Positions 320 through 24,600 of a stretch of 64,000 bases of DNA are shown here, piece after piece (positions within the stretch are counted from its first letter, which is position 1; every line of letters begins with the position of its first letter). This DNA comes from Botryllus schlosseri. Lineage: Eukaryota. The stretch lies in the NCBI GenBank assembly GCA_051294905.1, contig CM119385.1, positions 16,616,001-16,680,000 of the forward strand, written 5' to 3'. Under the pieces are notes generated by a model. It saw only the letters and a program-made list of their open reading frames with translations. It ran no database searches and was not told the origin of the DNA. The translations under genes and the position numbers were made by a program.

Positions 320-456
320 GGTTAACCTAACCATTATCCGAATAATCCAACCCTAGTTCACAGCGAACATCTTAGCACTTTACACCAATACCACCCCTTA
401 TGTCATTCCTATGCGTTGTATTTTCAACCAGTGTATAATAAGCTACATATATTCAC

Positions 457-619
457 GTTTAGCGGCTCTATCCCCGAACTGCTCTCCGCGTCGATGGCCG
501 ACTGTCTGTCGATGATCCGAAATATCTTCGCCGCCGATTTGCGGGCCAGCGTGAAGTCGGGCATGTGCTTGATGTTGCGTCCGATCGACAGGCCGGCGAA
601 CACAATAACGAAATACACT
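457..619 (-). CDS. ABCB1: ABCB1-like exon 22 (TM12, [19 protein letters not shown])
   Basis: cag| acceptor at 620-621. The donor gtgaat at 456 is the best candidate, so the exon end is less certain. Confidence 0.85.
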
Positions 620-3600
620 CTGTAAAGCAGGAGAGGCGGGAAATGAATCAGGGCGAATGTGCGTCGTGCATTTTTAAAGTGCTGAGATTATAAGCCCATT
701 TTCACTTGGAGTGTCAACCGTTTCCGTACTTTTTCGCCGTGGAATCCTAGAAACTACGATTGGTTTTATCATAGTATCCAAAACATATAGTACAAAGCTC
801 AGTGGCGGCTCGTCCTATAGGGCAACTGGGGCATTGCCCCACCTAAAATTCTCTTCAATAACAATTCTTTACCATTTATAGACGCACACCAATCTATATA
901 TACCGAAACCACAGCGAAAATCGTATTCTTCTTGTCCTTTCGCTTGTAAATGCCCATATATAGCGAAGTCTCTACGAAAATCGAATTCTCTTCTGTGTTT
1001 TTGCTTTGCGAATGCCTAGCCGGGGCATGCCCCGGTAGCGCTCATAACAAGCTTTCACTGTCTATTCTCTCAAAGCCGCGCACAATAAAGAAACGGTAAT
1101 TTACTCTCTCCTATTCATAAAATGACCGAGCAACCGGGGCAAATTAGCTCTGTGCCCTTAAGGTGTGATGTAACAATCGTATCTATAGCTGAACTCTGTT
1201 ACCGTCATATGCGTTTAGTCGACCTTTGGTGGTATAGGTCGATTTTGATGGTGTTTCACACCATGAAAACTCTTGAAACTTGGTATGTCATGTCGTGATG
1301 GTGGTATTTAACACTGCCCCAAGTTTCAGGGTTTTTACTTAAAGTTTAGGGTAGTAATTCCGTTTCCGAAGTTGAGTGTGTGCTGATCCTTCATGTATCG
1401 CAAACAGATTTTACTCAAAAGCTGGTATTGGTATCCAATCCATTGATTTTGACGATGTTCAATACTGAGATCGGTTATGACATTTGGCACGGTAAGTCTT
1501 AACGTTAGTATCGAACGCTGTACCAAGTGTAAAGTTTGTCACTGAACTGTGTTAGTGGTAATTTCGTTTCCTAATTCGAGTGAGAGCTGACTCTCATTTA
1601 TCGCTAACAGATTATACGCAAAGCCGGTATTGGTCTCTATTGATTTTAACGATGCTCCTTACCTAGATCCGTCATAAGCTTTTGAACAGTATGTCTTGAT
1701 TTTTATATCGAACGCTGTGCCAAGTCTCAAGGTTGACACTCAATGATTAGGGCAGTAATTTCGTTATCAAGGTCGAGCATGGTAGAGATGCGCTCCGATC
1801 TGACACTTTAGCCTTCAACGCATTGCGGATATCACGCAAAAGCCGTTGTATCTGCGGTAACGTTAACTGAGATGATGATATCATTCTCAGATTCCATTCA
1901 AATATTTACTTTGATATTATATCCTCCAATGTCAATTTCACCGTGAAATTGTGGCCGTCAAGCCATTTGCCTACAACCCCCTCAAGCGCGATAGCTATTT
2001 AGTTTTCGATGCGGGTAACAGCTGATCACTTGATCAGCCTATTCCTCAGTAAATTTTACGCAAAATTCGGTGTTGGTCTGTTCGCATTAATTTTGACAGT
2101 GTGCCATACCGAAAAGGGCCATGAGGACACTTCTCGATGATGTCATGTAACAGTGTACTAAGTTTAAGGCTTTCATCCACGTATTTATTCGGTAATATAT
2201 ATATTCCAAAGGCGATTTCGCAGCAGACCTATAGACAGTAATAAAGCCGTATGTGTCGTGTTACAGTCTCCAGTTTCAAGGCCAAAATCTTCTATGCTGT
2301 ACCGAGACCGAATTTCCGAGGCTGCTATTCTTAGTTCTTCAGAATGATGTTTTGGATTCAATATGACAGGCCCAATCTATGAGATAACAATTGCGTATCT
2401 GTCCGAACTCGTTGACCTTTCCAATTAGGCTTACGCTATCTCTGGAGTTATAGTCATTTCCATTTCTGCAGATAATTAGTCAGGCCTAGTGCGAACATGA
2501 ACCGTGTTGAATCTTTTTTCCGTACGCCGTTTACGCAATTCCCAAACTTCAAGTCACAGCTCACCGGCGGACCTCTCGAGTCTCGTGGCACATACGTTAA
2601 AATCACTGTTGCCGGGAAATTCATGTTACCGTACCATCATTAAGTTACTTGTTTACGTTGGAAAACGCGATTGTGACGTCATCTTGATAAAAAGTCGCTT
2701 GCAGCCCTTGCCCCACCACCCGATATTGTCACGAGCCGCCACTGACAAAGCTACTGAGTTTAGTGAATCGCATCTAAAACTACAATATTGATCTGGTTCG
2801 TACCAGCCCGAGCCACAGAAACGTTCAACGTGAGAAACGATAGTATCCTGGTAACGGCGGCGATCTGGGTGTCGAATTTCAAGTCTATCTCGTTCTTGGC
2901 GGATTAGACAAAGCGCGCCACTAATCTAAGTTATTATATTTAAAAACAAGTTGAGTGACGCATATCACACTAATGGTTTTTGCGTCATTACCGTTCGGCC
3001 AGAAATCTAATCCAAGTGTGAATTTCACTAAAGTTATGTACGTCATCACGGGTAAGATGGCAGGCGAGGCAGGCAAGGCAGATTTAAAAGCTTGAGAGAT
3101 GCGAAAGACTACTACAATAAAGTCACGTCACTGATATATTATGACGTAAACAACGGAAAATTGGCATTAAGGCATGGGAGCTTTTTCCCCTGTCATCACC
3201 CACAGACGCATTGATACTTGGTGGGCAATAACATCCTTGGCGATAATAAATGTACGCTCACCTGAATAGATTTTCGAACGTAATGTCGTTCTGCTCGATT
3301 AAATACGCGCCGAGCCTGAATGTGGCGGCGTACGTTAAATACGTCACGGCGTGCGCAAATCCGTGGGAAATCCCTTGGAGTATCGATCTTTTCCTCTTGT
3401 TTCTGGAGCGGTTTTTAACGTGAATCACTATGGATCGATGGAAGGCTAGTTGATAAAAAAAACAAAAATACCAACCTTGCTATCGCGGACAGGACAGCTG
3501 AAAACTTCGACAAGAAGTAATCTTCCTTGCCTAAATGTACGACCGTCTCGTGCGAATTCAGCGCTTCAAGCACGATCTAAAATTTCAAAAAATTACGAAC

Positions 3601-6600
3601 ATATCAGGATTAAGTATACCATATCGTATGGAGAGATATCAAATTACGCGCGCATAATGCATATATTGCGGGTCTCCTCTGTATACCGCTGGGCTCATTT
3701 GTCAAGGACTGTGGACATATCATATCAATATCGAAGATTTCGGCGAACACGATGAGTCTATCATTTTGTGCAAAGGTCACATAGCCGACGATCATTCTGC
3801 GAGTGCAGACGCGAAGTCGCATGTTGGATTACACGTTCTATTATAATTGCGAATATAGTTGGACTCAATTCTGTAAATTGTGCGTATTTCAAATATTCAG
3901 GATGGGGTACCAATACTAAAACAAGAAATCGAGTGACAATAAATCGCACGAAGTAATAAGAAAAATATCAAGTCAAATAAATTTGTCACGAAATATTTTA
4001 CTCAATGGTCATTGGTCATCTACGAAGATCTACGGATATTGTGGCTGGACCTTGGCTACGTCAATGCGTCGGAAACTTCCCGTTATCTTTCGCGGTCAGG
4101 CTGATAAAATTGGTTGGCCTTGCAATTTCACAACCTGGGTAATTTATTGTTTGATATTATAACTAATTTCGAGAATTAGTAATAAAAATATTAATTAAAA
4201 TAAATATAAAACAAATATATTTTTTCTGCAATAACTATCTCACCTCGCCCCCTTCCTCAATGTGCCTTTGGTCTCTGACTGTATTCCCGTGCATTTTCGA
4301 ATCCAATGCGTGCGAAGCGACTATAATCGGAAAGCAGGCCAATTGCAGCAAGGCCAGTTGCCAACCGCTGTATAACGTTATCGCTAACGCCAGCAGCACA
4401 GTTGTTGTCGTGCACACTACAATCCCGATCAATGTGCCAGAAAGCTGGAGAAGTAATAAATACCAATTGTAAGTAGCAATTAAGTATAGGCCTAGACTTG
4501 TTCACAGTTACATTATAAGTAAGTATAGAATCGATGCGTGGCATTATACATACCATGAGTGCATGGTCTGCATATGGCGCTGGACAAGGAATTTGCAAAA
4601 TTAGCCTTGCAAGGCTTTTTAAATCTTGCACAACCCCTTCATGGCATCCCGGTAGAGCTGACAAACGCCAAGCGGGGAAGCAATGGATACCAGTGTTCGG
4701 TCTGACCCAGTCGGGGATTGAACCCACGGCTTACCTATCTAGAAGCCGGACGCTACACGCTGTTTTGTCGGTTCTAGCAGGTGCTGTATGTCGCGATGAA
4801 GGGCCCTCTTGGTTGGCGCTAGATATCATTAGATCTCTATGTAAGAACTATTAGATAGATTTAAACTCTTTGATTGACGCTCAAGCAAATGAGGCTTTCC
4901 AAAACAAATTAGGTATCGGATTTGGATACCGCACGCAGACAGGTGACGAAAATATACATGGCAAGAAAATATGTATATTGTAGTAGTGTTAAGACTCGAG
5001 CCATTATCCAAGCATCAGTGTCGTAATATAAGAAAATGTATCGAGCATGACTTAACTCGAGACTGAACAGTGAGAACTTTGACTTGCATTCGGACTCGAG
5101 TCTCAACATTAAAAGTCAGACTCGGTGGGGAATTGTAAATGACTCGACTTGACTCAAGTCAAGACTATAACAGTCAGATTGAGTTGTGACTCGGAGCCTT
5201 GTTACATGATTACACCCTGGATGTGACCCACATATTCAACTTCACAAGCTTCTAACTACTAGTTTGTTTCAGGCCAAGGTATGTTTGCCTAATATATTAT
5301 GTAAGCAAGAAGAATTATTTCCGTCTACGTGCGAAGGAACCGCAAGGTGATCGAGTTCAACCACCATATTTTCCAATCCACGCTATGCCGTACGCCTAGG
5401 GACATAGAAGCAATCGCTACAAGTTTTACAAGAAAGCTTTGGTTTGATCCTGCAAGGTTACGAGCCAGCAGGTTGCCGATCGACAGACAAGATGCTATAC
5501 ATCAAAAGTACACGACAAAAAGGACAATTTGCCTCAGAAACAGCCTCTATATATAATCAGTAATCATACAGTTAAGATGAATCATCACTGGCCAGTGGCC
5601 ACCATAGTCGTTACGGTGGAGAAAACGTGCGTCGGCCGGGAATCGAACCCGGATCTATTGCTTGGAAGGCAACAATGCTAACCTTTACACCACCGACGCT
5701 CACGTGTGGACGAGTTTATCTCCTATTCATGAACGACTGTTCCGAGCGCTACGAGACACGAACGCTAAGAACCAATCCACTGCATTTACATACGGCAGTG
5801 TCGGCAGGACACGCTTCACAGATTACAGCAAATTCAATGCGGCTCTCGCACATCAAGTGCCATCGCATCATCGAATTTATTACCGAACCCGACAAGCGAC
5901 ACAATTTGCCATTCCGCGAAAGATGCATTTCCACATCAACACGACACCGGATCTACATGCAGCTCACAAGACGTTACAAAAATGCATTGAAATGCGAATA
6001 CCGTGGTACGATTACTGTCCTAGTTTTTCAAAAATTACATGCCATGCAATGGTATTATAACGATGATGATCACTTGAGCAACGACGATTATTGAAAGCGT
6101 GTAAGCAATGAAAGATAAGAAAAAAATGTGTGTAGCATTTAACAGTGGGTACAATGGATAATAAATATCGAAATTGGTTCACGTATCTCACCCCTTGCAC
6201 TTGCGGAACGTGGTAAGCCAGCAAATAAGGCAGTGAGCACGATTTCTTCGTGTGCTCGTCGAAGAAACTCATTTCCTGGCGCAGAATTGCCCCGAACGCC
6301 ATTTTTCGCAATCGCCTTGTCAACGCCTCGCCGGAAAACGCGAAAACGCCATGCTGAAAAACGTTACACTGTAATTAATCTTTTAAAATAGCCGCGCGGC
6401 CTTCGTAAGTACGGGCTAGGTAAATGTTTCTCAGGCATTCTCAATAATATACAGATTCTTACAGACGCAGATGTGTGAATGTTTGGAAATAGATCGTAAC
6501 CGGTTGGGAGAGAAATTTCATTTACCTAACGCCGCTAACGGTTGCTAAGGTAGTTAGCGTATAGTTGCTCAAGGATGGGGCCGTTCACACTTTCATTTTT

Positions 6601-9600
6601 GTGTCTTGGAGTCGACTTTTATCACAATACACCATAGCCAAGGCTGTGTCAACAAAAAGAGTTCGTGTACCATCTAAAAATAGTACATTGAACGCTCTCG
6701 TATGCGACATTTCATGCTGGTGACGTCACATTTTGTGCTACGATTATTGATATACGATGTTCTTTCCAATTCTCTACTAGTTTCTGACGATTACCCCTGA
6801 CGAGTATCAGCCGAAAATATTCGGGTTCATTTCAACATGATTATATTATTCAATTGAATATATTGAAGTTCTGTACCTCCAAGATGATGCAAACTCATTA
6901 CAAAACTACTATTTAGGGGAGACCGGGGACAAATGTAACTATATAAGGACAAATGTAACAATCGACCTCACCGATAGTAGGGTGGAAAAATCGCCATGAT
7001 ATTTTGAGTGCGTATGCGGTAGTTATGTCTAACATACCTGAAGTTACATTGAGCTGCTATGCGAAACCCCAGAATAATTTGGAAAAAATCGAAATTTTGG
7101 ACACTTGAGTAAATATTTTCTGGTCTGGAATAATTTGTTCCGAAAAATAATACCTGGAGTGGTTACAACGTAATATATGTAGCTGGAACAATGTGACCAT
7201 AGTCTACCGCGATGATAGGTAAACTAGGACTGGCATAGCAGGGAAAGCACCATGCTTGGACAGTTATCAGGGTCGAGAGTGTCAGGGGCAATTGTAACAC
7301 CCTGTTACTTTCGCCCCATTACAGTATCTTTACAATGCTGAATATCTTTGTTCATATGTTGGTATAGCCCATTTATCTATACTGCAGATAAACGTTGCAA
7401 CAGCCAGAAGTTCAATACCAGAACAGATACCCTTGGCATACCAATTCTAACATGATCATCTGTCGGTAACGGCCATGTACAGAAGTGGTTATGTGAATCT
7501 TAGGGTTCGGATATTTCCGTGATTCTACCACCCTTTCTCATGTTGATTGACTTTTGGTGTGTTGGCTTCAATGATCGTTAAGAACTCGCCCATCACTGAA
7601 TCCTGATCCCCTGGCTTTGAGCATGACTCCATTTCATTTGGTGTGAACAATTTATTTTAACTTTGCACAGAACAGAAGAATGCCATTAGCTTTGACGCCA
7701 CAGGATGCTGCGTCCTCGTTTTTCTACACCATCATCGGCCCATCCAACCAAGATATTTTAGTCAGTTGACCGAATGCCAAACCCGTTATATACACGCTGA
7801 ACAGCAGCACCTTGGTAGAAGAAGCCGAATATGTGTAGGGAGATGATGGAATGAATGTGTTTCTTATACACGTTCGGCTCATGAAGAAGGCACGAAGGGT
7901 GATACCGTATTCAGATGCCAAAATGCGATGGGACGTATAGCCTGGAAGCGTTTAAACTTCTCTTTCTTTAGTTTTATACAATACAATTCGTGCTCCCGTT
8001 TTCGTTGATAATTTCTTTCGTTTTTAGTTATAAATAACACAGTTATACTTGCCCCACATGGGCGGTACAAATACCGGATGTGCAGCAAAAGTGCTCATAT
8101 GCACGCGGGAATGTTTGCTTAGCGTGGTGCACCGAACCGTCAGCACATGCGATACGCACCAACAAGTATTTTTCCTAATAAACCATCAACACACACCTGC
8201 ACCAGATATACAAAGAACGTCACAGCTCCGAGCCCCGCCATCAGAATGCAGTCTAAATTGATCGACTGTCTTTTTTCCGAGTCGTCCGGTAGCACGTGAG
8301 CCTGCGACAAATGTTAATGATAAATAATGAAATATATGACTCAAGGACTCTCGATAATTTTATATATTGTCACATCTTTAATCCCCCGTCAACTGGTGAA
8401 TATAAATAGGGTTGCATTTAAAACAAAAATCAATTTAAAACAAACATGTTTAAAAAGGGCCTTTGTCTAATACACTGTTTAAAAATGTTTTGAACAAAGT
8501 GTTTTGAAAGACCACCATTTGTTGTAAATGCAACCCTAAATATAAACAGAATCCTATATGGGGTGAACAAACCGAGCATGTCCCCTAAGTAAAATGCGAA
8601 GAATAAAACCAGTTCCGACGCCAACTACATTCACGGACAGACTTCATTTGCAGTGGCGCGATGGCGTTGTATAGTACGTTCCACAACCGCAACATCGAGG
8701 GGTTGCGAGTCCAACTGCAGAACTCCTATCGAAGTGTTGCAGGTAATCGAGGCTCCTCCTTGCAATGTGATCCGCGTAAGCGGTGTCTTACAAAAGCCCA
8801 GAAGGAAGATGAGTCGTGATACAAGTCAGCCGGTCAGGAATCATAATAAGAAATATCGGCCAGGTGTAAATGACCATAGTATAGTCGAATACCATGAATA
8901 GGCCTACTAAACTAACAACTTGACTTAAGACTACGAAAGTAACAGGACAGATTGAAATTTTCAGCATCGAGCTGAAGATTGGAATGACCTCACGTGATCA
9001 TTATGCAGATCATAGCCAGTATGCTACACACCTCAAAATTGAGCCAGCAACAGGCGAATCTTACCCCAATCACAGCAGACAGGATGACGGCGAACAGCGG
9101 CTGTGTGGCGCCGTTCAGCAACGCCGCGAATGACCCGATAGCAAATAGCGGCCATTCGGGTCGATTCAAGCTTAAGATACGCCGCGTCGTGACGCCGGTC
9201 TGTCTTTTTCGGTTGTTCACGTCATTACTTCCGTCATCGCTTTCTCCCGTCTCGGTTTCGCAAGCGGATACCTGCAGCAAAAAGCGTTATCGCTATGGTT
9301 ATCGCGGAGTACTATACACGCAGAGTTCAGATTTTCTTGTTTTACATCATGGATGCCTAATTCAGAAACTAGTTCGGAATTCACCCGTCTCTGGTCCGGA
9401 TAGGCGTGAACAGGCGCACAAACATTAAGCATTGTGTATTACCCATGACGGGTCCTCTAATGATGTCTCGGAGTCGAAGGAATCCTTCCTGTTGCCGTTG
9501 TGCTGCGCCAGAAATTCGATCATCCTGCACGCGTCGACGCTCTTTACGCGCGAGCCTGCCATAAAAACGGGGTTGCGAATCAAGCCCGTAAAGTCGTAAT

Positions 9601-12600
9601 ATCCATCATACTTCGCACGCTCCTGTGGCGATCTTTGAGCGATTTTCCTAAGCACCCATCATGCTTCGTTTCCAGTACGTGATCAGCGATGCGTATCGTC
9701 GAAGGCTTGTGCGTCACAATGATTGTTGTTCTCGCGAGTCGGCCCTGTCGAGAGTACGATAATGATCATGATCACGGTCGCTGATGAGAATATATTGTTA
9801 TCTTGTTGAGATCTGTCTATGAAGTAAACGGCTTAATGATCAAATGAAGAAAATTGCGTGATGAACGGCAAACATCGCAATAAATATAGTTACAGGTCAA
9901 GGTGGGTGTCTTACTGCAAGGATGCTCCAAGTCGTTTCGACACCTTCTTATCGTTTCATTTTATCGCAATCTTGTGGCGCTTTTAAATGATGAAGATATT
10001 AATAAAACGAACCAGAAACTGGTAGACAGGCATCACAATATAAATGCAATAAAATCGAGTTCCCAATTGGTAAATCGTTTACTTCCAAGCGCCACAATAT
10101 TACGACAAAGACGTATCGAAAAACGGCTTACGAAAAACTATCATCCAAATACCGTCTCATTATACAATAGCGTTGAGCACAGTCGATTTTATTCCTAAAA
10201 AAAGGTGCATAAGAACTAAGCGTGAAAATGCGGACGGACAAACATTCGAAAATCTCACTCAATGTGTGGAATAGCCGAAAAAGACTCCAACTATTTATGA
10301 ATCAAGTGAATTATTAGCAATACGTATTCGTGTTTAAGGCTTAAAACTAAAATAGAAGTCAGAAGAATCGGTAAAATCAGTAGAATCGATGCAAAGTATA
10401 ATTACAATGTGACATTTATATATATTGTATCTGTATACGGCGGCACATTTCATCGTTACACCATGATAAAATATGGTGTTTCAGGTACGTCTGAAGAGAG
10501 AATCGTGTTTTTACACGTGTTTTTTTTTATTATCTGAGATGGATTATCAGCGAGAGCGCTTGGATATAGACATTGCCAATGAAATTACATTGTAACGCGG
10601 ATTAGCTGGAAAGTAGTCAGTTTCATTGAGGTGGCCCGATGAAAACGATGATGATATAGTTCACAAATGAAATACTCTCAACACTGAAATCAGCGACTAC
10701 GAAGAAGGATAAAGAAACAAGCAACTGAAATACAGGAAATATGTTTCCCCACTGATACTGGATGTACCGAAGTATCACTTGTCGACCGCACACATTCACG
10801 CACGCCACGAATATGAATAAAGTAAACACGCGGGGCAAGGTTGGGTAACGTTTTTTCTTCCTTTCTCGTGATCATAAAAATTCACCAACCTCCCGGAGAG
10901 CATCCAGGACGCGCGATTCGCTGTGCGTGTCCAGCGCAGAGCAGGGCTGGTCCAGAAGAAGAATCTTAGGCTTGCGTACCAGCGCCCTCGCGATCGCTAT
11001 CCTTTGTTTTTGACCGCCGCTCAGTTGACAACCTTGATTTCCAACGAGCGTCTCGAATTGCTGTCGAGACAAAAAAGAAATAGATGAATCACGCCAAGGC
11101 CAATGGTATATTTGTCATCAACGCGACCTAAAAACAGTCCGGTTTCTGAATACTTGTTGAAATAACAATTAACAACACGTCAGTACAGTCATTATTGTTT
11201 ACTGTCTACGCCGTGCAGATTCCAGCACTTTGTATCATTAGCCATTCTTGATTATCTATCAAGAATCAAATTCGATCAAATTCTATCAAATTATATATTC
11301 ATGCACATTGCACATGTACATCTCAATCTGTCAGGCGCGTGGATACTTGAGGACTTGCTAAATTTCAACGACATACCACACAATACTCGCACAAACGCAA
11401 TTGAATCGGTTGTCAGGTGTTATCTGATACCAAAGTAACACTGACGACATTGCAGAAAAAGTTTAAAGTGTCGCATGGTTCGTTGCAAGTGAGAAATGAT
11501 TCTCGGGAAATGCAAGAAGAACCCGTGTGAGTGATGTGTGTGGACTGTGTGAACATGTCGACAAGTCGATAAATCGACATGGTATTGACTGAGCTATCGC
11601 CGACCCGTGCCAGGAATTTCCATAATATTTAGAATTTCGTAATGAATCCTTTCAAGTGCAACATGTGGAAAGCGCACCGCACACTCCACGCATACAATGA
11701 GGCCGTAAGTACCGCAGCTGGTAATAACCGAATTTAAACGATATTAAAATACCAAGGATTTAAGTTGACGAAGGCCATTTCTCTCAACTCCTACACCAAT
11801 GTCAAGATTGATATGAATCTTCGTTTCTATAGCAATGTGCAAGAGGTCTGTGAAATATTGTTAAAGTCATACTTGATTATTCAATTGGAACACGAGAGTC
11901 ATTGCAATATAATTTCAAACATGCTAATTACTGGCAGAGAAAAGAATACATGGATATTAATTGGCATATTTAGTTAAACTTTCACCTGAAAGAATTTTAT
12001 TCTGCGTATAAAATAGACTGATATAGTCAGCATACTGTATGCGGTACATGTAGTCCAGAGTATACCTTACGTCACTATACCTGTGGCAGCGCCATTACAA
12101 AATCGTAAGCGTTGGCGGCTTTTGCGGCTTCTATCGCGTCATTGTCCGTAGCCCTGTCGCAGCCAAGTTTTATATTGTCCATAATAGTAGTGGCAAACAA
12201 CATTGGTTCTTGTGTCACAACGCCCATTAGACTTCTCAGCCAGTTAACATTCAAATTATTTATGTCGTGCCCGTCCAAAATGATCTGAAATGTAAGCACG
12301 ACTTTCGAACGCATTGTGTCATTTCTGTAGCTCTATACGGGGAAAGCGTAGAAATTATTGATATATTGCAAATAATATGAGAAAATGCAAATATCGTACA
12401 CGCATGTTACTTTTTGTAATTTGTCGATCAGTATCGCACGGGCCTGTATTCGTAGTTTAGGATCTGATAGTATTGGTGACTCACCTTTCCTCTTTTGGGG
12501 TCATACATTCTTTGAATAAGTTTCAAAATAGTTGATTTCCCAGATCCACTCGGTCCTTTGATTGCATATATTTTCCCCGGTGATAAATTCGCGTAATATT

Positions 12601-15600
12601 GACTGAGCACCTAAATGCCGATCATTTAGTTCAGGACTTCTCAAACTTTTTGTTCTGACACCTATAGAGGTGGGATTTATACGCCACCACAAATTTACAC
12701 GTGCACGTGAATGGTTAACCAAAAAAGTCTTTAAAAAATATATCTCCCGTGTGTAAATAGCAATTGTATCCAGTTAACAACGATTGTATTCAGTGAAAAG
12801 AAACAGAATAACAAAATACTATAAAGGCCGGGCCTATCCCGATTGTGGTTTAAACTAGGGATGGTGTGAACGCGAGGTTCACGTTCGCGTTCTGTGTGTG
12901 AACCTCGAGAATTTGGAGGTTCGCGTTCACAACAGAACCTTGGTAGGTTCTGCACTGTGAACCTTTTTCATATATTACAATTTTCACTTCATAATGACAC
13001 CTTTGGTTCGGATTTACTGCATTTCAACTGCGGGCCACTCTATGAATGACGCCGGCAGCATAAAAAACCAACTCAAAACGCCGAGCATGCACTTTGACAA
13101 TCTCAAAGATTTTACTTGCTTTGTTACAAAAATTTTGCTCGAAATATCCAAGTTTCCGTTTGTGAATATTTAGTGACTCTCCGCTGTGAGCTGACCCGCA
13201 ATCACACAACATCACGAGCGACATACATAACATGTAGAGAACGAATGATGCTTATTTAACCAATCAATGAGATTGATATCGTTCTTGATGTAACAAATCT
13301 AGCTAGCGTACGGGGTCTATCTTCACTTCATATGTTTACTGTATCATTAAAACCAAATCCGTGCGATTGAGGTGTTGGCTACAGCTGTATAACTTTTGGG
13401 GTAGCCTAATATCGGTAGCAAGTATAAAAACCCGTTTTACACTCTGCCCAATATCAATGAAGCAATACTCATACACCGAATACATTGCCTGGTCTGGTCA
13501 ATTCCCCGGCAACTCCTCTTCGAAATTATTGGCAAGGCGACGGATGATATTGATTTTATGGGAGTATTATATATCATTTGATTGCCTCAGTTGATACATT
13601 TAGCGACGTTTAAAACGCCAAAATGTACTTCAGCATTGTGGCATTATGTGGCCCGAGTCGTCGCTAGGTATCGTGTACATTAATATAGGCTATCACTTCA
13701 TTGAAAGATAGGGTTGCAATTAGCAATATGACGTCACGTGACGTCACGAGGTTCACGTTCGCGTTCACACAGAACCTTTCAAAAAGGTTCGCGTTCACAC
13801 GAACCTGAACCTTTCAGAGGTTCACACCATCCCTAGTTTAAACCAATATGACTATAGCGAGGAGGAAATATTGCTGCCATAGATAGTTATAATGCGACAT
13901 AAGAACATGTTGGACATTTGCATTCTCGCGGATCACTAATACATGAAACTATTTCTTATTCTAAATCCTTTTGAAAGAAATGTCATAACAAAATTGGCAT
14001 TATCAACGGTATGGCGGCGAGTAATTGCCAAGCTTTCCGAAAATAAGTCGCAACTTAACGATAACATTACCGGTCTATACTCTATACAAATCGATTAACA
14101 ACGCCCGCATGCAGTTGTTTTCTTTGTAAGAATGTACTTACAGCGTGTTTTTCCCTGTTAGGATAGCAGAAGGACACATTCTCTAAAGATAGATGTCCCC
14201 TTGTCTCGTAATCTTCCTCAGCTACCAAGGATGAGTCGATGTTACTTTTCTGCAAAATTATCTTTAAGAATGTCGCGCTAAGATTCTATTGCACCACAAC
14301 ACACCTTGTCAATAATATCGAAGATGGAGCGGGCTGTACTTTTCGCTGAGAAAATCGAATCCGCGATAGATGCAGCGTGGCCCAAGCTGCTGACAGCATA
14401 CATAATAGACAGAAACACCTGTGTGCGTATAGGATCATTAAATCGAAAGTTTGATAAGGTTGAATATCTCAATACATCCATCGCATGGGTTGTATACCAC
14501 GTTAATTACGACATCAAATAATATTACCGTTAACAACTTTCCGAGAGTGAATCCATTTTGATTGTTGAGGACGAGAATGGAGCCATACCAGAACGCCAAC
14601 GCGAATGTCAGAATCAAAGCACACCAGATGACTCCTTGAAAACCGCCACGCATCACGCCTTTCTTAATCCCTATCTTCTTCGCCTCGGCAAGTCTTTCGT
14701 CATATCTAAATGGAATTTTGAAGATGTGACTGTTTTGCTGCATGATTTCGGATCGAATTTCGAAGCGAGTTTGGGTGATATGAAGTTGATGCATGACATG
14801 GCATACCCGTTTTGTCACGCAACCCCTACTGGCCGGTTTTCTGCATATCACGCGGACGGGAAACTTATTAACGTACAGAATTTACAGGAATCGAAATGAA
14901 GTATAACTTTGCGCAATAGTGGGTTCAAGTTACATAAATACTTCGTGAATTATATTAGATTGATGACGAACGCAAACGAGCTTAGTACTATCATCAGGTG
15001 TCTTGTCCGTATCCTATAAAAGTAAATATGGATTTAAAGTTATAGTATTGACTGGAACCTATCAAGCTCCCATCATGACACCAATCACGAACAGTTTTCT
15101 TCGGTTGTTTTCGCTAATTACAGTATTCCCAACCAAAATTGAATTTGCTATGGAAACAACCCGCTTAAGACTTCAATATGCCAGTAATTACCATTCCTTA
15201 TTAGTGTGATTCATCAATCACGCTTAAGCGGGTACTATTGTCGAATTCCTGCATCTCGTAAGCAATCCAGTGGTCATTTATCACAAAAGGCGGTTAAATA
15301 AGTCCAATCGGCGCGATTACGCGGCGACCAAGACCACATTACATACTAATATGAAGATAGAATATTTTCAATCCGACATTTATCAATCATATTTCATGTT
15401 GTACACAGCTGGCGGAGCTCCGCCGATCGTGGTTCGCATGTGGTTGGTCATATCGGAAAAGACTTGTACGTGGAAGATAATCTCTGGTGAACATATTCAA
15501 CGCTTCATAATATTCTATTCATAATAATTAAAGTGACATGTTTATCTATTTCACCACTTATTTTTTATAAACTGTAGTTACTTGGCTATATGTATACTGT

Positions 15601-18600
15601 GACAAAATCTAAAAATTGAGCCATGAGTTTATCGGTTGGTGTGACGGGGCATATACGAGAGTGCACTGTATAGTGCTCTGACATTAAATTTATTCCAGTG
15701 ACATTACTAATTTAGTTAGCTATCCCGCTGCAATCATACAGGGACAATGTGAAAATTTTGCACTAGCTTAAATAACCCCGGAATTTCTAACCACATCACG
15801 TGCGACGAACTAGATCATAATATAACAGAACTTTAATACTTTTTCAAGTATTCCGTACAGAGACTAGGAATGTACGATGCGGTGTGGTATATGTTAATCC
15901 GCACGATAATACCGGGAATTTAAACACAAAATAACGTAAGTCATGTAGATATCGGACCTTGAAATCAGATATCTTCCACGGCTCTGCCATTAAATATGAA
16001 TTAATTGACTAAAAACACCAGTTCTGTAAGATCAAATAGCCCAACGTCACTTCGCCGGACTTTGAAATGACCAAGCATTGGCACTACGGAGTATTTTGGT
16101 TTGGCGCTTCAATGTGACATTAGTTTGCGACTGATTAAGTAAAAGATCTGAATCCCTTTCAAACTTAATTCTTTCTTATAAATTATAGACGTGCCGTCTA
16201 TTGTTAAGATTTATTTTTACAGTACAAGCATCACCACAGAAAATGTCGAATTGAGTGGATAACTGAGCGTTGCTGCATTATTGAGCTTGTAACAAAGTGG
16301 CCCTTTGAGTAATCCCCATCGAAACGGCAAACGAACGATTGCATCTGAAGTACTCAGAACTGGAAACAGCGAATAGATATTAGCTTTTAGGCGTGTAGCC
16401 AATAAATCCGCCTACGCAGTTGAAATGTATTCAATTCACCTGTTCACTTCCAATTCCTCGGCTCCGTACGCGACAACCGTGCGTATGTTTTTCAGCACGC
16501 TCTCCACGATAGATCCGGCCTTAGAGTATGCTTTCGCCTCCTTCTCGCACCAAATGTTGTGGAACTGAAACAATTGACGTATTAAGGGTTTGTTATCATT
16601 GCGATCACATTCACTTGCGAGTGTCTTTCACGGGGTTATTGAAAGCACGATGCATGCAATAGCAAGGTAATTCCGACATGATACTTTAATGAATAGGGAA
16701 TTACTCAATAGGACGTTTGTTTTCAGGTACACAGTAAACGACAAAAAGTCAGATTTCCAGATTTTCGCGTTAGCGCAGGCCGCGAGTCAAGTCAACTGAA
16801 CTTTCTGGAACAACGTTCAGTTCTCACTAGGGTTGCATTTAAAACAAAAATCAATTTTAAACAAACACATGTTTGAAAAATTACCCTTGTTTAAAACATG
16901 TTTTTCATATTTTTTGTTTATTAGCCATGGCGTCATGAATCTGTAATTGTGACATGACAGTGGATTGAAATTGAAAATATAGTGCAAATATGGCTCCTTC
17001 GACGAGAAGGGCTTTCGTCCTCTGTCGTAAACAGACCAAAAATATCTTTAACCATAGGACTGCATCGTTATGCAGCATTTTACGGTCAGCGGTCATCATC
17101 ATCAGAACACCCATTCCGTACCAATTTATCTATGTCTACTTGTTATAACTCTCGAACTAACGACGATTTTGAGGGTTCAGCCACTCCATATCGTACATGT
17201 TTTTCAAAAGTGTTTACACAATTATGGCATGATTATACAACGTTTGAATAAAAACCACATTTTTCTAAAGGCATTTGTTTAAAACACTATTTCAAATATG
17301 TTTTGAACTAAATGTTTTAAATCCAACCCTAGTTCTCACACTCAACGGAAGCCGGTTCGAACAGATGAAATACGCCCCTGGTCTGTCTCTAATTATACTT
17401 CTACTTGGGTAGAAAGGCTGAGGACTTTGATCACCTCATGGTTGATACGCGTCCATTTCGTCAACAAATATATTTCATGGCCGCGTATTCATAACTGTCA
17501 GAAGTATAAGCAAATTTCCTGAATACTAATAGGAAATTCCCACACATTTACCACATCGTAAAAATGGCGTCGTTTGTTTTAATACGCCTTAAACTGCATT
17601 ATTCAAGCGTCAATCACGAGATGTCTTGAAACGAAACCCTTCTCACCTTCCCCATCAGCACAGTTGCCCCGGCCAGAACAGGTGCCGCGGCCAGAATTAC
17701 GAACGTGAGTCGCCACTCGTAATAAAAACCGATGCCAAGTCCGAAGGCGGACGCCGACAGGCATTGTACAAAACAACCTGTTTTGTCGCCGATCACTTCG
17801 CTAATCTTCGCCACATCCCTGAACAAGCAAAATTGAAATCAGTGTGATTTAGCAAAACACGCGAGCCTAACTGGTATGAGTAAAAGAAGCGTGAATCTTT
17901 TTGTATATCCATCAGCCATACTTGGTGACAATAGATCGGTGGTTCTAATACTATTTAGATCGCGACCCAAATCTGACTTTTAGTGGTATCTCGCGACCCA
18001 AGCAACACACGCCAAAATGAATGCATTTGGGTGCCGACCAATTATATCAATAACGAAGGGTTTGGCCACCCAACGACGGTCAATTATCGCCACCGAACTT
18101 TTTGGTACCGCACTTTGCCCAGCCGTATGTTGGCCCAACGCCATATATTCATGTGTCCAAGCGTGGACGGGGTTTGGCCTCATAAACCGGCAACCGCTCG
18201 TTGTACAACTCTACACTAAAGAGTCCCAGGTCTCCGACGGTGTTTTCCAGAGAAACCAATGTTGAAAAAATCTTATCATGAATTCAAACCAATTCGTTTA
18301 ATACAAAGGTCGGCACATTTTCATGATCAAGTCATGCTGTGGTGGCGACTTCTCCGCGTGTCTCGCTTATTGGCCGTGGTACCAAACTCAGTGACCCCTG
18401 ATATGCTCAAACCAACTACAGTAAATCGCGCGAAAAGCGAAGATATTTTTGTTGTTGCAATGACCTCAAATAATATTACATACATATTAAAAGACCGCTC
18501 TGGTACCGTCGCGACCCAAAATTATACCCTTCGCGACCTATGTTTGGGTCGCGACCCATACTTTAAGAACCACTGCAATAGATAGTTAATTGCGGCGTAA

Positions 18601-21600
18601 GAAAACTGTCTCAGATGAATCTGTGCCAATTGGACTTCTTTGTCTCATTTTACCGTAAATGCAGACAGTATAGTCTGGATTATAGCGGATCGTAAAATGT
18701 ATTTCAGATATGCAACGAAAACACAAAAGGCATGACATAATAGTCGACATTATAGACGAACTAAAACAGGTCAGAAAAAAGATCCAAAGGCGGTCAAAGC
18801 TCAAATCCATAGATATTATAGAATGAGGATCGCAGCAACCTTTTGCAGCGTTCAGTGTCAAGGTACCAAAGGAAACCAATCGCACACGAATTGCTAATCA
18901 AACGGCACAAGGGTCGGCGTGATCAAAGTATAGGCAAAATGTTGACTCATATTTGTCGAAGAGCGTATATGCACGATCTTCGTTCGACCCGTGTCATGAT
19001 GATGTGCCACTGGCACACCTTTGACCGTTGAGTAAAAGAGTTGAGTAAAAGAGTTGTGCACCAGAGAAAGATTTGTAATCAGCGTGATAGAGAAGTTTAT
19101 TTAATCTACGAAATGGGTTTGGTAAATATATCTACCAAAATCGACAGCGGATACTAGGGATGTCAAAAACATTTTGACTCGGGATGTAAAGATAACCGGC
19201 AACACTTTCAAGCTCTGACGCATAGATCAGGACTCGTTCAAATTGTTACAATATCTGACTGACGAGGACAATAATAACAGCTATAAAAGTTGCTTGTGAG
19301 TTAACAATCATGAAATCAATTCTATAACCTCATTCCAATTAAGAAAACGCGTTACGCTGTTACGCGATATATATTGGCCTCCAACCGCGGGTATTGGACG
19401 ATATTGTACCTGGAATTTCGTTGCCACCCAATAATGGCTTTCGCCATTTTGCCATACCCGTACTAGTTTGTAGATAGTTTTTTCCGTTTTTCGTCGCTTA
19501 TGCCTTATGATGCGACCTGAAATTCTCATTTGACCACGGTAAATAGCAACGATCGACGATTATCGGCCTAGATTTTGATATCGCGGGATCGCTGACAACC
19601 CGCAAGGCTTGCCTTATCCCTTCTTGGTAAAGAGAAATTCGTGAATACATAACTGAAAACGGCTGGTACATGACTATATACTCTCTTCAACAAAATTCTT
19701 CAAACTTTCAACATTAGATTATGGCAGTAACGCAGTAAGTGAAAAGTCATTCTACGCAATACTTAAATGTTGTAAATCATGACATATTTCCGATTTACCG
19801 GAGATATTTGCCAAATGAGATCAAATCCAGCCAATGGAGATGAATTTAAATTTTTTAAATTTAAATATGAAATTTAGAATTTTTAAATATAATGGGTCGT
19901 CTTATTTCCATGACACAACAAAAATCACCAGCCAGCGTACGCTTTTCAGGGCCCAGGCAAATTTGAAGGCTGAAATCCAGTTCCCTTTCGTGAATTCAGT
20001 AAGCTGTGGTTTTACTTATGGTATCAGAAATGACAGAACACCCATACATAGCCTATAGTAACTGGAATAGTCTATGGATGTGGGCGAAAGGGGCTTTGTC
20101 TCTTCCGCCACAATTCTACACCTGCTGCGTGTGACGTCATATGATTGTTGAGTTATAATTCTCCCGCGCTCCAAAATTTTCACCCTCGTTACACTTATGC
20201 GTATAGCCGTACAGAAATTATGTGTCATTATGTCACCTTGAAGCCTTGGCTTCGGCGTATTTTTGCGTATTTGGCCCGCATCAAAAATGTTTGGACGCCC
20301 ATGTTACGTTATATTTTTGCATAAACTCTAATTTCTACTAGATTTCTGCGTGAGTTTATTTTGTGATATATTTGGCTTGTCGTGGAATATATCATTTAGG
20401 TAGGACTGCGAACGGATTCTGTTACGTTTTAAATTTCGCATGTGCAATAATGGCCGTCATACCTATCGAGTTTCGTGTTGACTTCGTGCGCCTCCCTGCT
20501 ATCTATCCATTCTCTCTCTTGGTATATGATGGACCGGAAGAGAAGATATCGTATTCTTCTGGATTGACGGTTCGCCGACATTGACAGTGAAAACACCTGC
20601 CGAAATGATCCATGTGCTGTACTTATGACGAGGCGCTATATGATTGGATTGTTGTTGTTTGGAGTTTGACTCAGTAAAAATTTTCGCACTCCATTGTTTC
20701 CGTATGTTACTCGACTCAGACTAATCATTGTAATCAGTAGATTTATTGCCACGACCAAAATTCGCAAGTGAGGTCAGGCTTATAAAAGGGACCGAAGGGT
20801 CATAATCATTGAAAGTTATACTTTTTGCATAGCGATTTTTGAGTAGCTTCCTATATTCGATCTAATAATCGTAACTTGAAACTATTTATTCGCTTATGGT
20901 GCGATTCAATATCATTACAAATCTTCAGTTTCAGTGAAATCACAAAAGAAAAGGTGTGTATTCGAATTCGAAATAGAAATATAATTCGTATGCGTATCTT
21001 GTTTTCAAACGGGTGCCCGGCGAATTTGACCTGAGCCACGAATCAAAGTTATAGTAAATATAGTCACTAGCGTAATCGAGAGGGTGGCAAGTGCTGTCCC
21101 CTCGATCTTGTAAGCCTTATCTAGATTCTGTACACTACATGTGCCAAAGTGCAATATAGTCTCTTGACTTAAGATTGTCTACTAAAAAGTTGTTCATTTA
21201 ATGAATCCATGGTCGGTAATGAAACGTACTGCATGATATGGCACCAGTTCTGAAATTTTATAATTTCTAACGGTAGCACAAAGATTAATATACAATGTTA
21301 GGAATATCAACAACTCAAGTAATGGTGTGATCCTCGGAAGCTTACGAAAGGCGCAAGGTGAAAAAGTTTTGGCACCCCTTTTTTAATGACAGCGTACTTA
21401 CATCTAATCGCCGAGTGCTCGAAACTTTCGAATTTTGTATGTTTCACTAAGAGCACTCAATTATCGATACGAACGTTATGGAATCTTCTAAATCTCCTTG
21501 AATGGAAGTTGTAAATTTATAGTCCATGACAGTGGGCGCCTAATTAGATAATGTCACAAGAAATTTCACGTAAGTGCTTGGAAGTAGTAGCCCTCCAGCC

Positions 21601-24600
21601 AAAGGCATCAGGAAATTTGAAAGCGTGTCACTTGTCTTGTCTTACCTGCAGAAAGCCGCAGACTAAAACAACAGCTGAGCATATGAGATAGTATACGGCA
21701 AAGTATGCCATCTGCGTGGTCAAGTCTTCAGATCTACAAAAATATGCACAAGTTTATATATCAAGCACTCTCTGTACTTAACGCGAATACTCTACATAAT
21801 TTTGATCACTTGCTAATTGCAGGACTTCAGTACGGTGAACACCGCTTATTGGTTAAGCAACATAATTGCCATTAATATAGTACATGGAATTTGTTGGATG
21901 AAAACGCACCATCAACATCAAACAGCCATAATGACCAAACCCATTATTTGAGCACAACGTAGAATGTTGTGTTTCTGTAGTGCAATTGCATCATCGAAAG
22001 GAACATTATTACATGGCGTGAGATCTAAAACCAAAACTGATGTCTAGAAATAACATGTTTACTGAATGTATTGTGAAGTTGTTCATTCGGCGTTTACACA
22101 CATATTCGTGCATCCTATAGTTATGCAAATAATACACAACAAGCGTCTACAAGCTCCGCGCGAAAAGCAAAATGAACTCAATTCACTTCATTTTTCCACC
22201 TAATTTCACGCCGGCCTTGCAAGCTTACCGTTCGATAAATAGAGTTTCAAGAGACGGAATGCACGTAATATCTAGGCCTAGGTTAATTCCTATTTGCGAA
22301 ACCTACACGGTATTCCTCCGGGCAGTAATCATACATTTTCATACATCACGTGTCAGACCATGATCGACTGATCAGTGATCAATTATCGTGTTAAGGTTTT
22401 CAGTATTGTGAGCAACTACGCGTTGTTCACATTAACCAACCGCATCGAATTTTCCTATGCGCATGAAATACAGAAAATGATATATTTTGCTGTTGACAAA
22501 TGACACGGTAATCGACTTCTTCGAGACGCAAACACAATATTTGGCATAATTCAACGTCGGGCAGTGTGACGTAATACAGAAACAATGCCATACCCTCCGG
22601 TTTCGTTGGTTTCGAGGTTAGCGTACTGGCTACAATTCGTAGTTGAGATGTTACGAATTCGTGGTTCACCCGCTACGCCGATGCAAGAGGAATATCTCAC
22701 AAATGAATCGGCAAGCTCTCCAAACACTAAAACGAAATCGATGTCGGATTTAAAATAACGCAGAATGAACTTTTGATCGCAAGCGAGAATCATTACGGAA
22801 TTCCCACCAACTTGACTACGGAGATTTTCCTGTCGCTAACACCAAAGTGCGTTATAATTCCATGACAGGTCACGATCCTACAAGACATTAAATCGTAATC
22901 CAGTCCAATTCATTGTAGGGTAGGGTAGGATATATGTCACCTACAATAAAACTACACAGTGTCTGAGTGTATTGATAATAACTACTGATTGAAACAATGC
23001 GTGTTCTCTGCCACACTGTCATTTTATGTCATTTTATGTCATGTCATTTTATGAATATCTTGTTATCTCCAATATACAACAGGAGATTCCACAATTTATC
23101 GCAGATGCCGAACTGGCCCTCTGATGGCTACTATTGATCTTATATTCTAAAATGTATTCGCCGCGGTCCGCATTAGTATTATAAATTACCACGATAATCA
23201 ATTTCATGAACAGTAACTAATAACCATTGACAAACATGAATAGGGGACATGTTTCACAGAAATACGGCCCGGCAAATCCCGCGCGGTTGAGCAAGTTCGT
23301 GGGCTGTGCCAGATTAAGCTTTAACCATTTTGTCGGAGTACAGTACGTTCGATGAGTGTCTGTTAATTAAAAGCGATGATTTTGTTTGATTTCAGAAGTT
23401 GCCGACTTTTCAGGCTCAAGGGAAATTTTATTGTTGATATTTTTCGAGGCACCGTCAGTGTGAGGTACCAATAGCACGCCCCTCTATGCCCGGGCCACGG
23501 ATTTTCAAAGATTCGGAACCGGACTATATATGATGATGTACTCGATCCGGACAATTTTCTAGCACAGTGGTTCTCAACCGCCGGTCCGTGGCAAGTTTCC
23601 TGCTGGTCCGCGAAATATATTAAAATTTTATATCTAAATTTAAAAAAGGAAAGTTAGACGGTTCTCCATTATTAATGAAATAAAACATATAATTTTAAAT
23701 CGATTTAGACGTTTGGAGATTAATTTTCTGCATGGTGTCGTAATAGAGAGTTCATGGTCTACCTCGCGTAGCTACGTAACGATGGTGCAAGTGCGGTACG
23801 AAATTGTTTTAATTCAAAACTATACTACAACTTGTTTTTAAACAAACCTCCTTAAATTCCGTAAGTGCCATTAAGCGACACCTGACAGTATAATAGAGGC
23901 TTCAGCAAACAGCAAAGTCACATTTCTTTTAAAAAATACAGATCAATCACAATTAGGTTAGAGATCTTTGACATGATTTTGCGAGCTTCGAACAGAAACT
24001 TCAATATACAATGCATCAATGCCCGGGTAACTAACGTAGTTCACGCGATGTGAACTATTATTACGATTAGGACGTTTTATATTTTTATCCTGGTCCTTGT
24101 CCTTCAACAGAACCACGTGTGAATATCCAACATTGAAAAGGCAGCAGAAATGTAGTTTCCCACATTACATTTGAGATGCATACACTTCTCGTAAATAAAC
24201 TTTGGGTTAATTCGATTTTTGACAGTTCACCGGTCCGCAGGATTTGTTTGGGCGTTTTACCGGTCCGTGAAGTCAAAAAGGTTGAGATCCACTGGTCTAG
24301 CATAAAAAATGGTCATAACACTTGGTTAGCCTGATTAGCACGACCTTCTTTTGGGAGACAGAAAGTAACTGTGCGGGTCTTCAGTTCACCTACACAACGA
24401 GTCTGAAATATTATTAACAGTCATGATTAATTGAGTTGCGTCAAAAGCATCTGATGTAACACATAAATATATCGTATATCAGTGCATGCACCAAGGGCAC
24501 ACAGCGCAAAAAAGCGCTCCAAAATTCGAAAACGCGTTTGCGTATACCACACTATCAAATTAATGCTGGCATATACAACAAACAAATCCTCCAATGATTC

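What the first reader, a model, noticed from the sequence alone, without database searches (positions are those of the whole stretch)
10890..11060. NBD1 carries a natural catalytic E->Q substitution ([12 protein letters not shown]) plus altered X-loop and H-loop
Seen: codon CAG at 10947-10949 gives DQ where ABCB proteins have DEATSALD. The X-loop is TLVGNQG (consensus TLVGERG) and the H-loop is THKPST (AHRLST). Walker A, Q-loop, LSGGQ and SALD are intact. Established: E->Q here is the standard laboratory mutation that permits ATP binding but blocks hydrolysis, and ABCB11/BSEP has a naturally degenerate site 1 (E->M). Inference: an asymmetric P-glycoprotein with one dead ATPase site, evolved independently of or shared with ABCB11, or a non-transporting regulator, or relaxed selection. 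This is the best protein-level candidate for new biology in the window.
Basis: partly seen in the sequence, partly recalled or inferred. Interest (0 to 1): 0.72.

Follow-up and report, generated by a model that had tools for sequence, protein, structure and literature searches.

The report
Sea-squirt bile-salt-pump relative, one dead ATPase site

Summary
Exon 10890-11060 (minus strand) encodes [11 protein letters not shown], and the CAG codon is unchanged in spliced transcript contigs from three independent studies.

The gene is intact: 27 exons and 1257 aa. It runs from window 28185 to 5.6 kb left of the window. Polymorphisms give pN/pS of about 0.11.

NBD2, left of the window, keeps the catalytic DE but has the signature LSRGE. 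The lesion is therefore confined to composite ATP site 1, and site 2 is canonical.

Trees from the full length and from the membrane domains alone place the gene with Styela clava "bile salt export pump-like". That pair sits inside a tunicate clade that is sister to vertebrate ABCB11 (100/100). An AU test rejects grouping it with ABCB1/4 (p 0.006).

All sampled tunicates, the hagfish and the lampreys have Gln at this position. Jawed vertebrates have Met. All 18 paralogous NBD exons checked in this genome have DE.

So this is the ABCB11-type degenerate site, shared and not independent, with Gln as the older state.

A further point: this gene and Styela's have both lost the canonical C-terminal segment of NBD1.

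It is a new variant of a known kind, of moderate interest.

The parts
10890..11060 (-). Exon 13 of the gene: NBD1 X-loop (TLVGNQG), signature LSGGQ, Walker B LLLDQ, D-loop SALD
   Evidence: Translation. Exon borders come from spliced RNA contigs and GT-AG sites. Pfam ABC_tran E 1.5e-11. The Styela orthologue has an exon with the same borders.
10947..10949 (-). CAG codon = Gln545, in place of the Walker B catalytic Glu
   Evidence: Unchanged in RNA contigs of three studies.
14142..14249 (-). Exon 10: start of NBD1 with the A-loop Tyr390 (FCYPNR)
   Evidence: RNA joints, gene model, motif table.
12485..12610 (-). Exon 11: NBD1 Walker [10 protein letters not shown]
   Evidence: RNA joints.
12081..12284 (-). 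Exon 12: NBD1 Q-loop GVVTQEP. Thr463 stands where vertebrate ABCB11 has Glu.
   Evidence: RNA joints.
9612..9744 (-). Exon 14: NBD1 H-loop (IIVTHKPST, His576), the following strand (ADHVLETK), then a non-canonical sequence
   Evidence: RNA joints. An HMM of the canonical NBD1 tail matches only up to ADHVLETK.
9556..9611 (-). Real 56-nt GT-AG mini-intron
   Evidence: Spliced out in contigs of X1 and X4. It keeps the frame open.
9443..9555 (-). Exon 15: non-conserved stretch replacing the canonical NBD1 C-terminal segment, then the linker
9065..9271 (-). Exon 16: linker and start of TMD2 ([11 protein letters not shown]...)
1..28185 (-). The part of the gene that lies in the window. The ATG is at 28185, and 22 of the 27 coding exons lie here: 28185-28108, 28040-27947, 22726-22627, 21733-21646, 20596-20463, 17818-17647, 16564-16440, 14705-14528, 14418-14305, 14249-14142, 12610-12485, 12284-12081, 11060-10890, 9744-9612, 9555-9443, 9271-9065, 8301-8197, 6353-6192, 4444-4244, 3576-3476, 3402-3262, 619-457. 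The five NBD2 exons lie left of the window in L002 (= G000:C15:16606001-16616000): 6611-6411 (Walker A), 5522-5316 (Q-loop), 5236-5101 (LSRGE + LLLDE), 4741-4622 (H-loop), 4442-4351 (end and stop).
   Evidence: Homology-guided and RNA-guided model. The ORF is 1257 aa with no internal stop. It is 47% identical to Styela clava BSEP-like over 1284 aligned positions.

Best explanation
The exon belongs to the single ABCB11/BSEP-clade gene of a tunicate genome, an intact and expressed 1257-aa (TMD-NBD)2 exporter. Its two composite ATP sites are unequal by descent.

Site 1 is built from the Walker A, Walker B and H-loop of NBD1 and the signature of NBD2. It has Gln545 in place of the catalytic Glu, and LSRGE in place of LSGGQ.

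Site 2 is built from the Walker A, Walker B (Glu1180) and H-loop (His1211) of NBD2 and the LSGGQ of NBD1. It is canonical.

The most likely mechanism is the one worked out for ABCB11 and other asymmetric type-I exporters. Site 1 binds ATP, because all its binding residues are kept, but does not hydrolyse it at a useful rate. The Arg in the NBD2 signature reshapes site 1 so that ATP is not locked in. Hydrolysis at site 2 alone drives the transport cycle.

Shown here: the sequence, the gene structure, transcription, conservation and clade membership. Inferred: ATP binding without hydrolysis at site 1, and transport activity. The substrate is unknown.

Gln is the older state of this lesion: tunicates, hagfish and lampreys have it, and the Met of jawed vertebrates is derived.
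For: Sequence and RNA confirmation.

NBD2 with LSRGE, LLLDEATSCLD and VAHKL.

Intact 27-exon ORF. All introns are GT-AG except one GC-AG, whose position is conserved in Styela.

Purifying selection: 16 synonymous against 6 non-synonymous differences in 417 codons, pN/pS about 0.11. The NBD1 core is 59% and the NBD2 core 61% identical to Styela.

Clade: the gene pairs with Styela at 100/100. The tunicate clade has 100/99. With vertebrate BSEP the support is 100/100 in full-length trees and in a tree from the TMDs only. An AU test rejects a union with ABCB1/4, p 0.0055.

Residue distribution: Q in 7 tunicate rows, Myxine and lampreys; M in gnathostome BSEP; E elsewhere. That needs 2 changes on the tree.

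All 18 paralogous NBD exons in the same genome have DEATSALD.

Mechanism by analogy: PMC7544095 reports that ABCB1 carrying only E556M is arrested, and that adding S474E, G1178R and Q1180E restores activity. PMC7756269 reviews degenerate sites.
Against: No biochemical data exist for any tunicate member.

One of the four ABCB11-type site-1 residues is absent. The residue before the Q-loop Gln is Thr, not Glu.

The lineage leading to this gene and Styela's is long-branched (stem 0.62-0.74, tip 1.0-1.2). It has also lost the canonical C-terminal strand and helix of NBD1. The function may therefore have shifted.

Expression is low. Contig depth is about 5-11, and a 6% sample of one 2026 RNA run placed no reads on the exons.

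The polymorphism list from the read tool was truncated, so pN/pS is approximate.
Confidence: 0.78

Rival explanations
1. The protein has been rebuilt for a function other than transport, such as a regulator or channel like CFTR or SUR. In this reading NBD1 is reduced to a structural or regulatory ATP-binding module.
For: NBD1 has lost its canonical C-terminal segment in this gene and in Styela. AlphaFold2 on the Styela NBD1 gives a confident core, then pLDDT below 50 from just after the post-H-loop strand. The branches are long. The X-loop and the H-loop flank are altered. Tunicates are not known to make bile salts (my own knowledge, not tested here).
Against: Both TMDs align end to end with ABCB11 relatives. 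Site 2 is fully canonical, as expected for a working engine. No extra regulatory domain was found. The linker is short and unconserved.
Confidence: 0.12
2. The copy is under relaxed selection, or is an expressed pseudogene on its way to decay.
For: It is the most divergent member of its clade. Its NBD1 tail is unrecognisable.
Against: The ORF is 1257 aa with no stop and 26 spliceable introns. The supposed frameshift is a genuine 56-nt intron removed in transcripts of two studies. No frame of that region contains a hidden canonical tail. pN/pS is about 0.11. The NBD1 core is as conserved as the NBD2 core. The tail loss is shared with Styela at the same position, so it is old and has been tolerated.
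Confidence: 0.05
3. The E->Q change arose independently (by convergence) in a P-glycoprotein (ABCB1-like) paralogue, unrelated to the ABCB11 lesion.
For: The replacing residue (Gln) differs from the Met of jawed-vertebrate ABCB11. This genome has many ABCB paralogues.
Against: The trees, with and without the NBDs, place the gene inside the ABCB11 clade at 100/100. The AU test rejects the ABCB1/4 grouping. Gln is shared by all sampled tunicates and cyclostomes and is always coupled with LSRG/LSKG in NBD2. Ciona paralogues with DE fall outside the clade.
Confidence: 0.03
4. The Gln codon is a sequencing or assembly error.
For: None.
Against: The codon is identical in transcript contigs from three studies spanning 2015-2022.
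Confidence: 0.01

Closest known systems
Vertebrate bile salt export pump ABCB11 (human structures 6LR0, 7DV5, 8PMD and others; degenerate NBS1 with M584, R1221, E1223, E502)
   Same: It belongs to the same clade and has the same architecture. The lesion is confined to the same site 1. The NBD2 signature is the same, LSRGE. The NBD1 Walker A lacks Cys and the NBD1 X-loop lacks Arg, as in ABCB11. Site 2 is canonical. PDB BSEP chains match the exon at E about 1e-35.
   Different: The Walker B residue is Gln, not Met. The residue before the Q-loop Gln is Thr, not Glu. The canonical NBD1 C-terminal strand and helix are missing. The N-terminus is short. The substrate is unknown, and overall identity is about 40%.
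Styela clava 'bile salt export pump-like isoform X1' (P0013)
   Same: It is the nearest relative: 47% identity over the full length and sister at 100/100. It shares [22 protein letters not shown], a degraded X-loop, an altered H-loop flank, GVVFQDP in the NBD2 Q-loop, conserved exon borders, and loss of the NBD1 tail at the same point.
   Different: The NBD2 signature is LSRGQ, against LSRGE here. The replacement tails are unrelated in sequence (16% identity). This gene has an extra 56-nt intron where Styela has one 195-nt exon.
Cyclostome ABCB11 (Petromyzon marinus XP_032821425.1 / AKC42142.1, Lampetra, Lethenteron, Myxine glutinosa)
   Same: The combination is the same: LLLDQ in NBD1 and LSRGE in NBD2.
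   Different: They keep Glu before the Q-loop Gln, the canonical NBD1 tail and AHRLST/SHRLST. They belong to the vertebrate side of the clade.
Laboratory Walker B E->Q mutants of ABCB1 and ABCB4 (e.g. PDB 6C0V, 6S7P, 5KO2)
   Same: The residue change at the same position is identical. These engineered chains are the top PDB matches of the exon.
   Different: They are engineered, usually in both NBDs, and they arrest the cycle with ATP occluded (PMC7544095, PMC7756269). Here the change is natural, sits in one site only, and is accompanied by the compensating LSRGE.
Other asymmetric type-I ABC exporters (CFTR, TAP1/2, ABCC1, TM287/288, TmrAB)
   Same: One degenerate site and one consensus site. 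The degenerate site combines the Walker B of NBD1 with the signature of NBD2.
   Different: They belong to different subfamilies. The natural replacements listed for them are Asp or Ser (PMC7756269), not Gln.

Membership tests
ABCB11/BSEP-type ABCB full transporter with degenerate site 1 | (TMD-NBD)2 full-transporter architecture of about 1250-1350 aa | tested here: met
   27-exon, 1257-aa model. It aligns end to end with BSEP-like proteins. Pfam ABC_membrane and ABC_tran hit exons of both halves.
ABCB11/BSEP-type ABCB full transporter with degenerate site 1 | Phylogenetic placement inside the ABCB11 clade, apart from ABCB1/4/5 | tested here: met
   100/100 in the full-length trees and in the TMD-only tree. 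AU p 0.0055 against an ABCB1/4 grouping.
ABCB11/BSEP-type ABCB full transporter with degenerate site 1 | NBD1 Walker B catalytic Glu replaced by a non-acidic residue (human M584) | tested here: met
   Gln545. The residue is Gln, as in tunicates and cyclostomes, not the Met of jawed vertebrates.
ABCB11/BSEP-type ABCB full transporter with degenerate site 1 | NBD2 signature LSRG(E/Q) (human R1221, E1223) | tested here: met
   LSRGE at residues 1155-1159, L002 5236-5101.
ABCB11/BSEP-type ABCB full transporter with degenerate site 1 | Glu preceding the Q-loop Gln of NBD1 (human E502) | tested here: not met
   Thr463 (GVVTQEP). Styela has Ser, Ciona and Clavelina have Gln, and vertebrates have Glu.
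ABCB11/BSEP-type ABCB full transporter with degenerate site 1 | Canonical consensus site 2 (NBD2 Walker A, Walker B Glu and H-loop His, plus NBD1 LSGGQ) | tested here: met
   GKSGCGKST, LLLDE, VAHKL and LSGGQ.
ABCB11/BSEP-type ABCB full transporter with degenerate site 1 | Canonical NBD1 C-terminal strand and helix (G.xVE.G.H.EL...GVYF.LV) | tested here: not met
   0-18% identity in this segment, against 67% between Ciona and Myxine. The HMM match stops after ADHVLETK in every frame. The same holds in Styela.
ABCB11/BSEP-type ABCB full transporter with degenerate site 1 | ATP-dependent bile-salt export | not testable with these tools
Symmetric P-glycoprotein (ABCB1/4/5 type) | Catalytic Glu in both Walker B motifs and LSGGQ in both NBDs | tested here: not met
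   Gln545 and LSRGE. The 18 paralogous NBD exons checked in this genome all keep DE, and all but one keep the glycine pair of the signature.
Pseudogene | Disabling lesions and neutral evolution | tested here: not met
   No stop or frameshift. Spliced transcripts in three studies. pN/pS about 0.11.

The most novel reading that the evidence does not exclude
In the tunicate lineage that holds this gene and Styela's, the ABCB11-type exporter has gone a step beyond the known degenerate site. NBD1 keeps its ATP-binding core but has lost the catalytic Glu, the X-loop Arg, the Glu before the Q-loop and its whole C-terminal strand and helix. It would then be a natural 'one-engine' ABCB protein with a structurally reduced NBD1, working on a non-bile-salt substrate. 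The series E (ABCB1) -> Q + LSRG (tunicates, cyclostomes) -> M + E502 (jawed vertebrates) would record the order in which the degenerate site was assembled, before bile salts existed.
Probability: 0.3. Interest if true: 0.55.

Novelty: new variant of a known kind. Interest (0 to 1): 0.4.

Why it matters
ABCB11's dead site 1 is a textbook example of ABC asymmetry. Published work treats Met584 as fully conserved and shows that ABCB1 tolerates loss of the catalytic Glu only together with three companion changes (PMC7544095).

The gene here, with its tunicate and cyclostome relatives, shows that the natural lesion began as the same E->Q change that laboratories use to stall ABC transporters. It is always paired with Arg or Lys in the NBD2 signature. 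The Glu before the Q-loop is absent in this gene and Styela.

These proteins are ready-made evolutionary intermediates. They can be used to test which companion residues are needed to keep an E->Q transporter cycling.

The finding also places the asymmetric design before the origin of vertebrate bile salts, which raises the question of what the pump carried first. For the scan itself, the result is mostly an explanation: the odd residue is inherited family biology, not a new system.

Tried and rejected
1. Hidden frameshift. I built an HMM of the canonical NBD1 tail from 184 ABCB proteins and searched all three frames of window 9380-9800, and the equivalent Styela region. It matches only up to the strand after the H-loop. 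There is no buried ancestral tail. The 56-nt gap is a true intron.

2. A search with the Styela NBD1-plus-tail region found no other protein sharing the aberrant tail. It gave no closer relative and no annotated protein of this genome.

3. The 58-aa exon search of 1.84 billion representatives gave no near-identical hit. The gene's own protein is apparently not in that library as a full-length entry. Styela P0013 was the only DQ hit among the top 150.

4. Raw RNA reads of run X22 (6% sampled) fell only on intronic repeats, not on exons. They give no information on level or strand.

5. The spliced 1257-aa protein has no reference form. I therefore did not submit it to the database, Atlas or structure tools. 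The Styela orthologue served as a proxy for the fold, and that model says nothing direct about this protein.

6. Multi-word look-ups of earlier findings returned nothing.

7. I considered and dropped independent convergence, sequencing error and pseudogene status (see the rival explanations).

Full report
**Observation**

The finding lies on the minus strand. Window 11060-10887 translates without a stop to a 58-residue piece. It holds the X-loop TLVGNQG, the signature LSGGQ, the Walker B ILLLDQ and the D-loop SALD. The codon at 10947-10949 is CAG on the coding strand.

Reads from public runs were laid on window 8800-14600. Single transcript contigs from three studies (X1 2015, X4 2021, X6 2022) join the exons by skips that all end CT..AC on the + strand, which is GT..AG for the gene. 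The exon of the finding is bounded by these joints, at 10890-11060 once the ambiguous cut is placed on GT-AG. In that exon the contigs differ from the window only at 10905 and 10953. Both are third-position synonymous Leu changes. The Gln codon is therefore real in DNA and RNA.

**Gene**

The window is G000:C15:16616001-16680000, and the gene continues to the left. I fetched the next 20 kb.

I built a model from three sources: tblastn with tunicate and cyclostome guide proteins, the RNA joints, and a junction search that kept the frame and the GT-AG rule.

- The model has 27 exons and encodes 1257 aa.
- The ATG is at window 28185. The stop ends 5649 bases left of the window, at L002 4351.
- There is no internal stop.
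- Every intron is GT-AG except one GC-AG in NBD2. The position of that intron is conserved in the Styela gene.

Pfam finds ABC_membrane and ABC_tran on exons of both halves.

The RNA contigs of two studies do remove 9556-9611, so it is an ordinary mini-intron and the frame is intact.

**The second half of the protein**

NBD2 has:

- Walker A GKSGCGKST
- Q-loop GVVFQDP
- signature LSRGE
- Walker B ILLLDEATSCLD
- H-loop VAHKL

In an ABC dimer each ATP site is made of the Walker A, Walker B and H-loop of one NBD and the signature of the other. Both deviations, Gln545 and LSRGE, therefore fall in the same composite site (site 1). Site 2 is canonical: the motifs of NBD2 plus the LSGGQ of NBD1. All ATP-binding residues of NBD1 are kept: A-loop Tyr390, Walker A Lys, Q-loop Gln464, Walker B Asp544 and H-loop His576.

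**Relatives**

A search of 1.84 billion representative proteins with the exon gave one hit with the same motif among the top 150. This was P0013, which a second search names as Styela clava "bile salt export pump-like".

Motif tables show the following:

| Group | NBD1 Walker B | NBD2 signature |
|---|---|---|
| Every sampled tunicate member (Styela, Ciona intestinalis, C. savignyi, Clavelina, two unnamed) | LDQACSALD | LSRGQ (one LSKGQ) |
| Hagfish and lamprey ABCB11 | LLLDQATSALD | LSRGE |
| 95 gnathostome ABCB11 proteins | LLLDMATSALD | LSRGQ |
| 180 other ABCB full transporters | DE | Gly at that signature position (Ala in one) |

The coupling is complete: 109 of 109 against 0 of 180.

In the same genome, all 18 paralogous NBD exons that I extracted have DEATSALD. 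This is the only such gene there.

**Phylogeny**

A careful maximum-likelihood tree of 37-39 full-length proteins gave these supports:

- this gene with Styela: 100/100
- that pair inside a tunicate clade: 100/99
- the tunicate clade as sister to vertebrate ABCB11: 100/100 for the union

Cyclostomes are sister to gnathostomes. ABCB1/4/5, and Ciona paralogues that keep DE, fall outside.

I repeated the tree with the two membrane domains only, to avoid circularity with the NBD motifs. The union again has 100/100. An AU test rejects holding this gene and Styela's with ABCB1/4, p 0.0055.

On the tree the three states need two changes. With the outgroups in state E, these read as E to Q at the base of the clade and Q to M on the gnathostome stem.

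Other agents' notes on this genome call it a tunicate, which agrees with the tree.

**Selection**

Of the differences between the RNA contigs and the window that the read tool listed, 16 are synonymous and 6 non-synonymous in 417 covered codons. That gives pN/pS of about 0.11. The list was truncated, so the value is approximate.

The NBD1 core is as conserved as the NBD2 core: 59% and 61% identity to Styela, and 55% and 58% to Ciona. These results do not fit decay.

**An extra feature**

After the strand that follows the H-loop (ADHVLETK), the protein no longer resembles any ABCB. Identity in this segment is 0-18% for this gene and for Styela, against 67% between Ciona and hagfish.

An HMM of the canonical tail stops matching at the same point in both genes and finds nothing in other frames. 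AlphaFold2 on the Styela NBD1, run with a 30-sequence alignment, gives pLDDT above 90 for the core and below 50 from just after that strand.

So the common ancestor of the two lineages lost the canonical C-terminal strand and helix of NBD1. Both lineages also sit on long branches.

**Mechanism and comparison**

Published work defines the ABCB11 degenerate site by M584, R1221, E1223 and E502. It shows that ABCB1 with only the Glu replaced is arrested with ATP occluded, and that adding the three companion changes restores ATPase and transport by weakening ATP binding at site 1 (PMC7544095). A review lists Asp, Met and Ser as the natural replacements (PMC7756269). ABCB11 was already reported as present "from sea squirt to human" (PMC4458048), without comment on the Walker B.

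The gene here meets the clade, architecture, Walker B, signature and site-2 criteria. It fails two: Thr in place of the Glu before the Q-loop, and the missing NBD1 tail.

I therefore read it as an ABCB11-type asymmetric exporter driven by site 2. Its site 1 binds ATP but does not hydrolyse it. That mechanism is inferred, not shown, and the substrate is unknown.

**Verdict**

The feature is inherited family biology, not a new system.

Three points seem new relative to the papers I could search:

- Gln, not Met, is the older and still widespread state.
- The Arg in the NBD2 signature always accompanies it, while the Glu before the Q-loop does not.
- One tunicate lineage has further reduced NBD1.

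Noticed in passing
window 9556-9611: A 56-nt GT-AG mini-intron is removed in transcript contigs of two studies. Styela has a single 195-nt exon here.
   Followed up: yes
window 9443-9690 and L021 8540-9140: The canonical C-terminal strand and helix of NBD1 is missing in this gene and in the Styela clava orthologue, from the same position. The replacement sequences are unrelated to each other.
   Followed up: yes
L002 5099-5100 (about 4900 bases left of the window start): The intron after the NBD2 Walker B exon appears to use a GC donor. Its position matches a Styela intron.
   Followed up: partly
window 8800-8990, 9770-9960, 12680-13840: Intronic stretches have summed contig depth in the hundreds to tens of thousands in all runs, with many loose ends. 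These are abundant, transcribed repeats (transposable elements) inside the gene's introns.
   Followed up: no
L003, L004, L005 (G000:C13:9164395-9297383): Three ABCB paralogue copies have identical NBD1 exon translations. A second cluster of at least five copies lies at C2:14.69-14.90 Mb. All keep DE.
   Followed up: partly
window 9705: A G>A difference in run X1 changes Pro578 to Ser in the already unusual H-loop flank (THKPST to THKSST).
   Followed up: no
P0280, P0285 and related UniRef entries: Several Ciona proteins automatically named 'Bile salt export pump' keep DE and fall outside the ABCB11 clade in the tree. The true Ciona clade members are listed as 'Uncharacterized protein'.
   Followed up: partly
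window 14417-14525: One X1 contig retains this 109-nt intron, while an X6 contig splices it. Other X1 contigs lie wholly within introns (10404-10792, 11560-11920). This suggests pre-mRNA or some DNA in that library.
   Followed up: no
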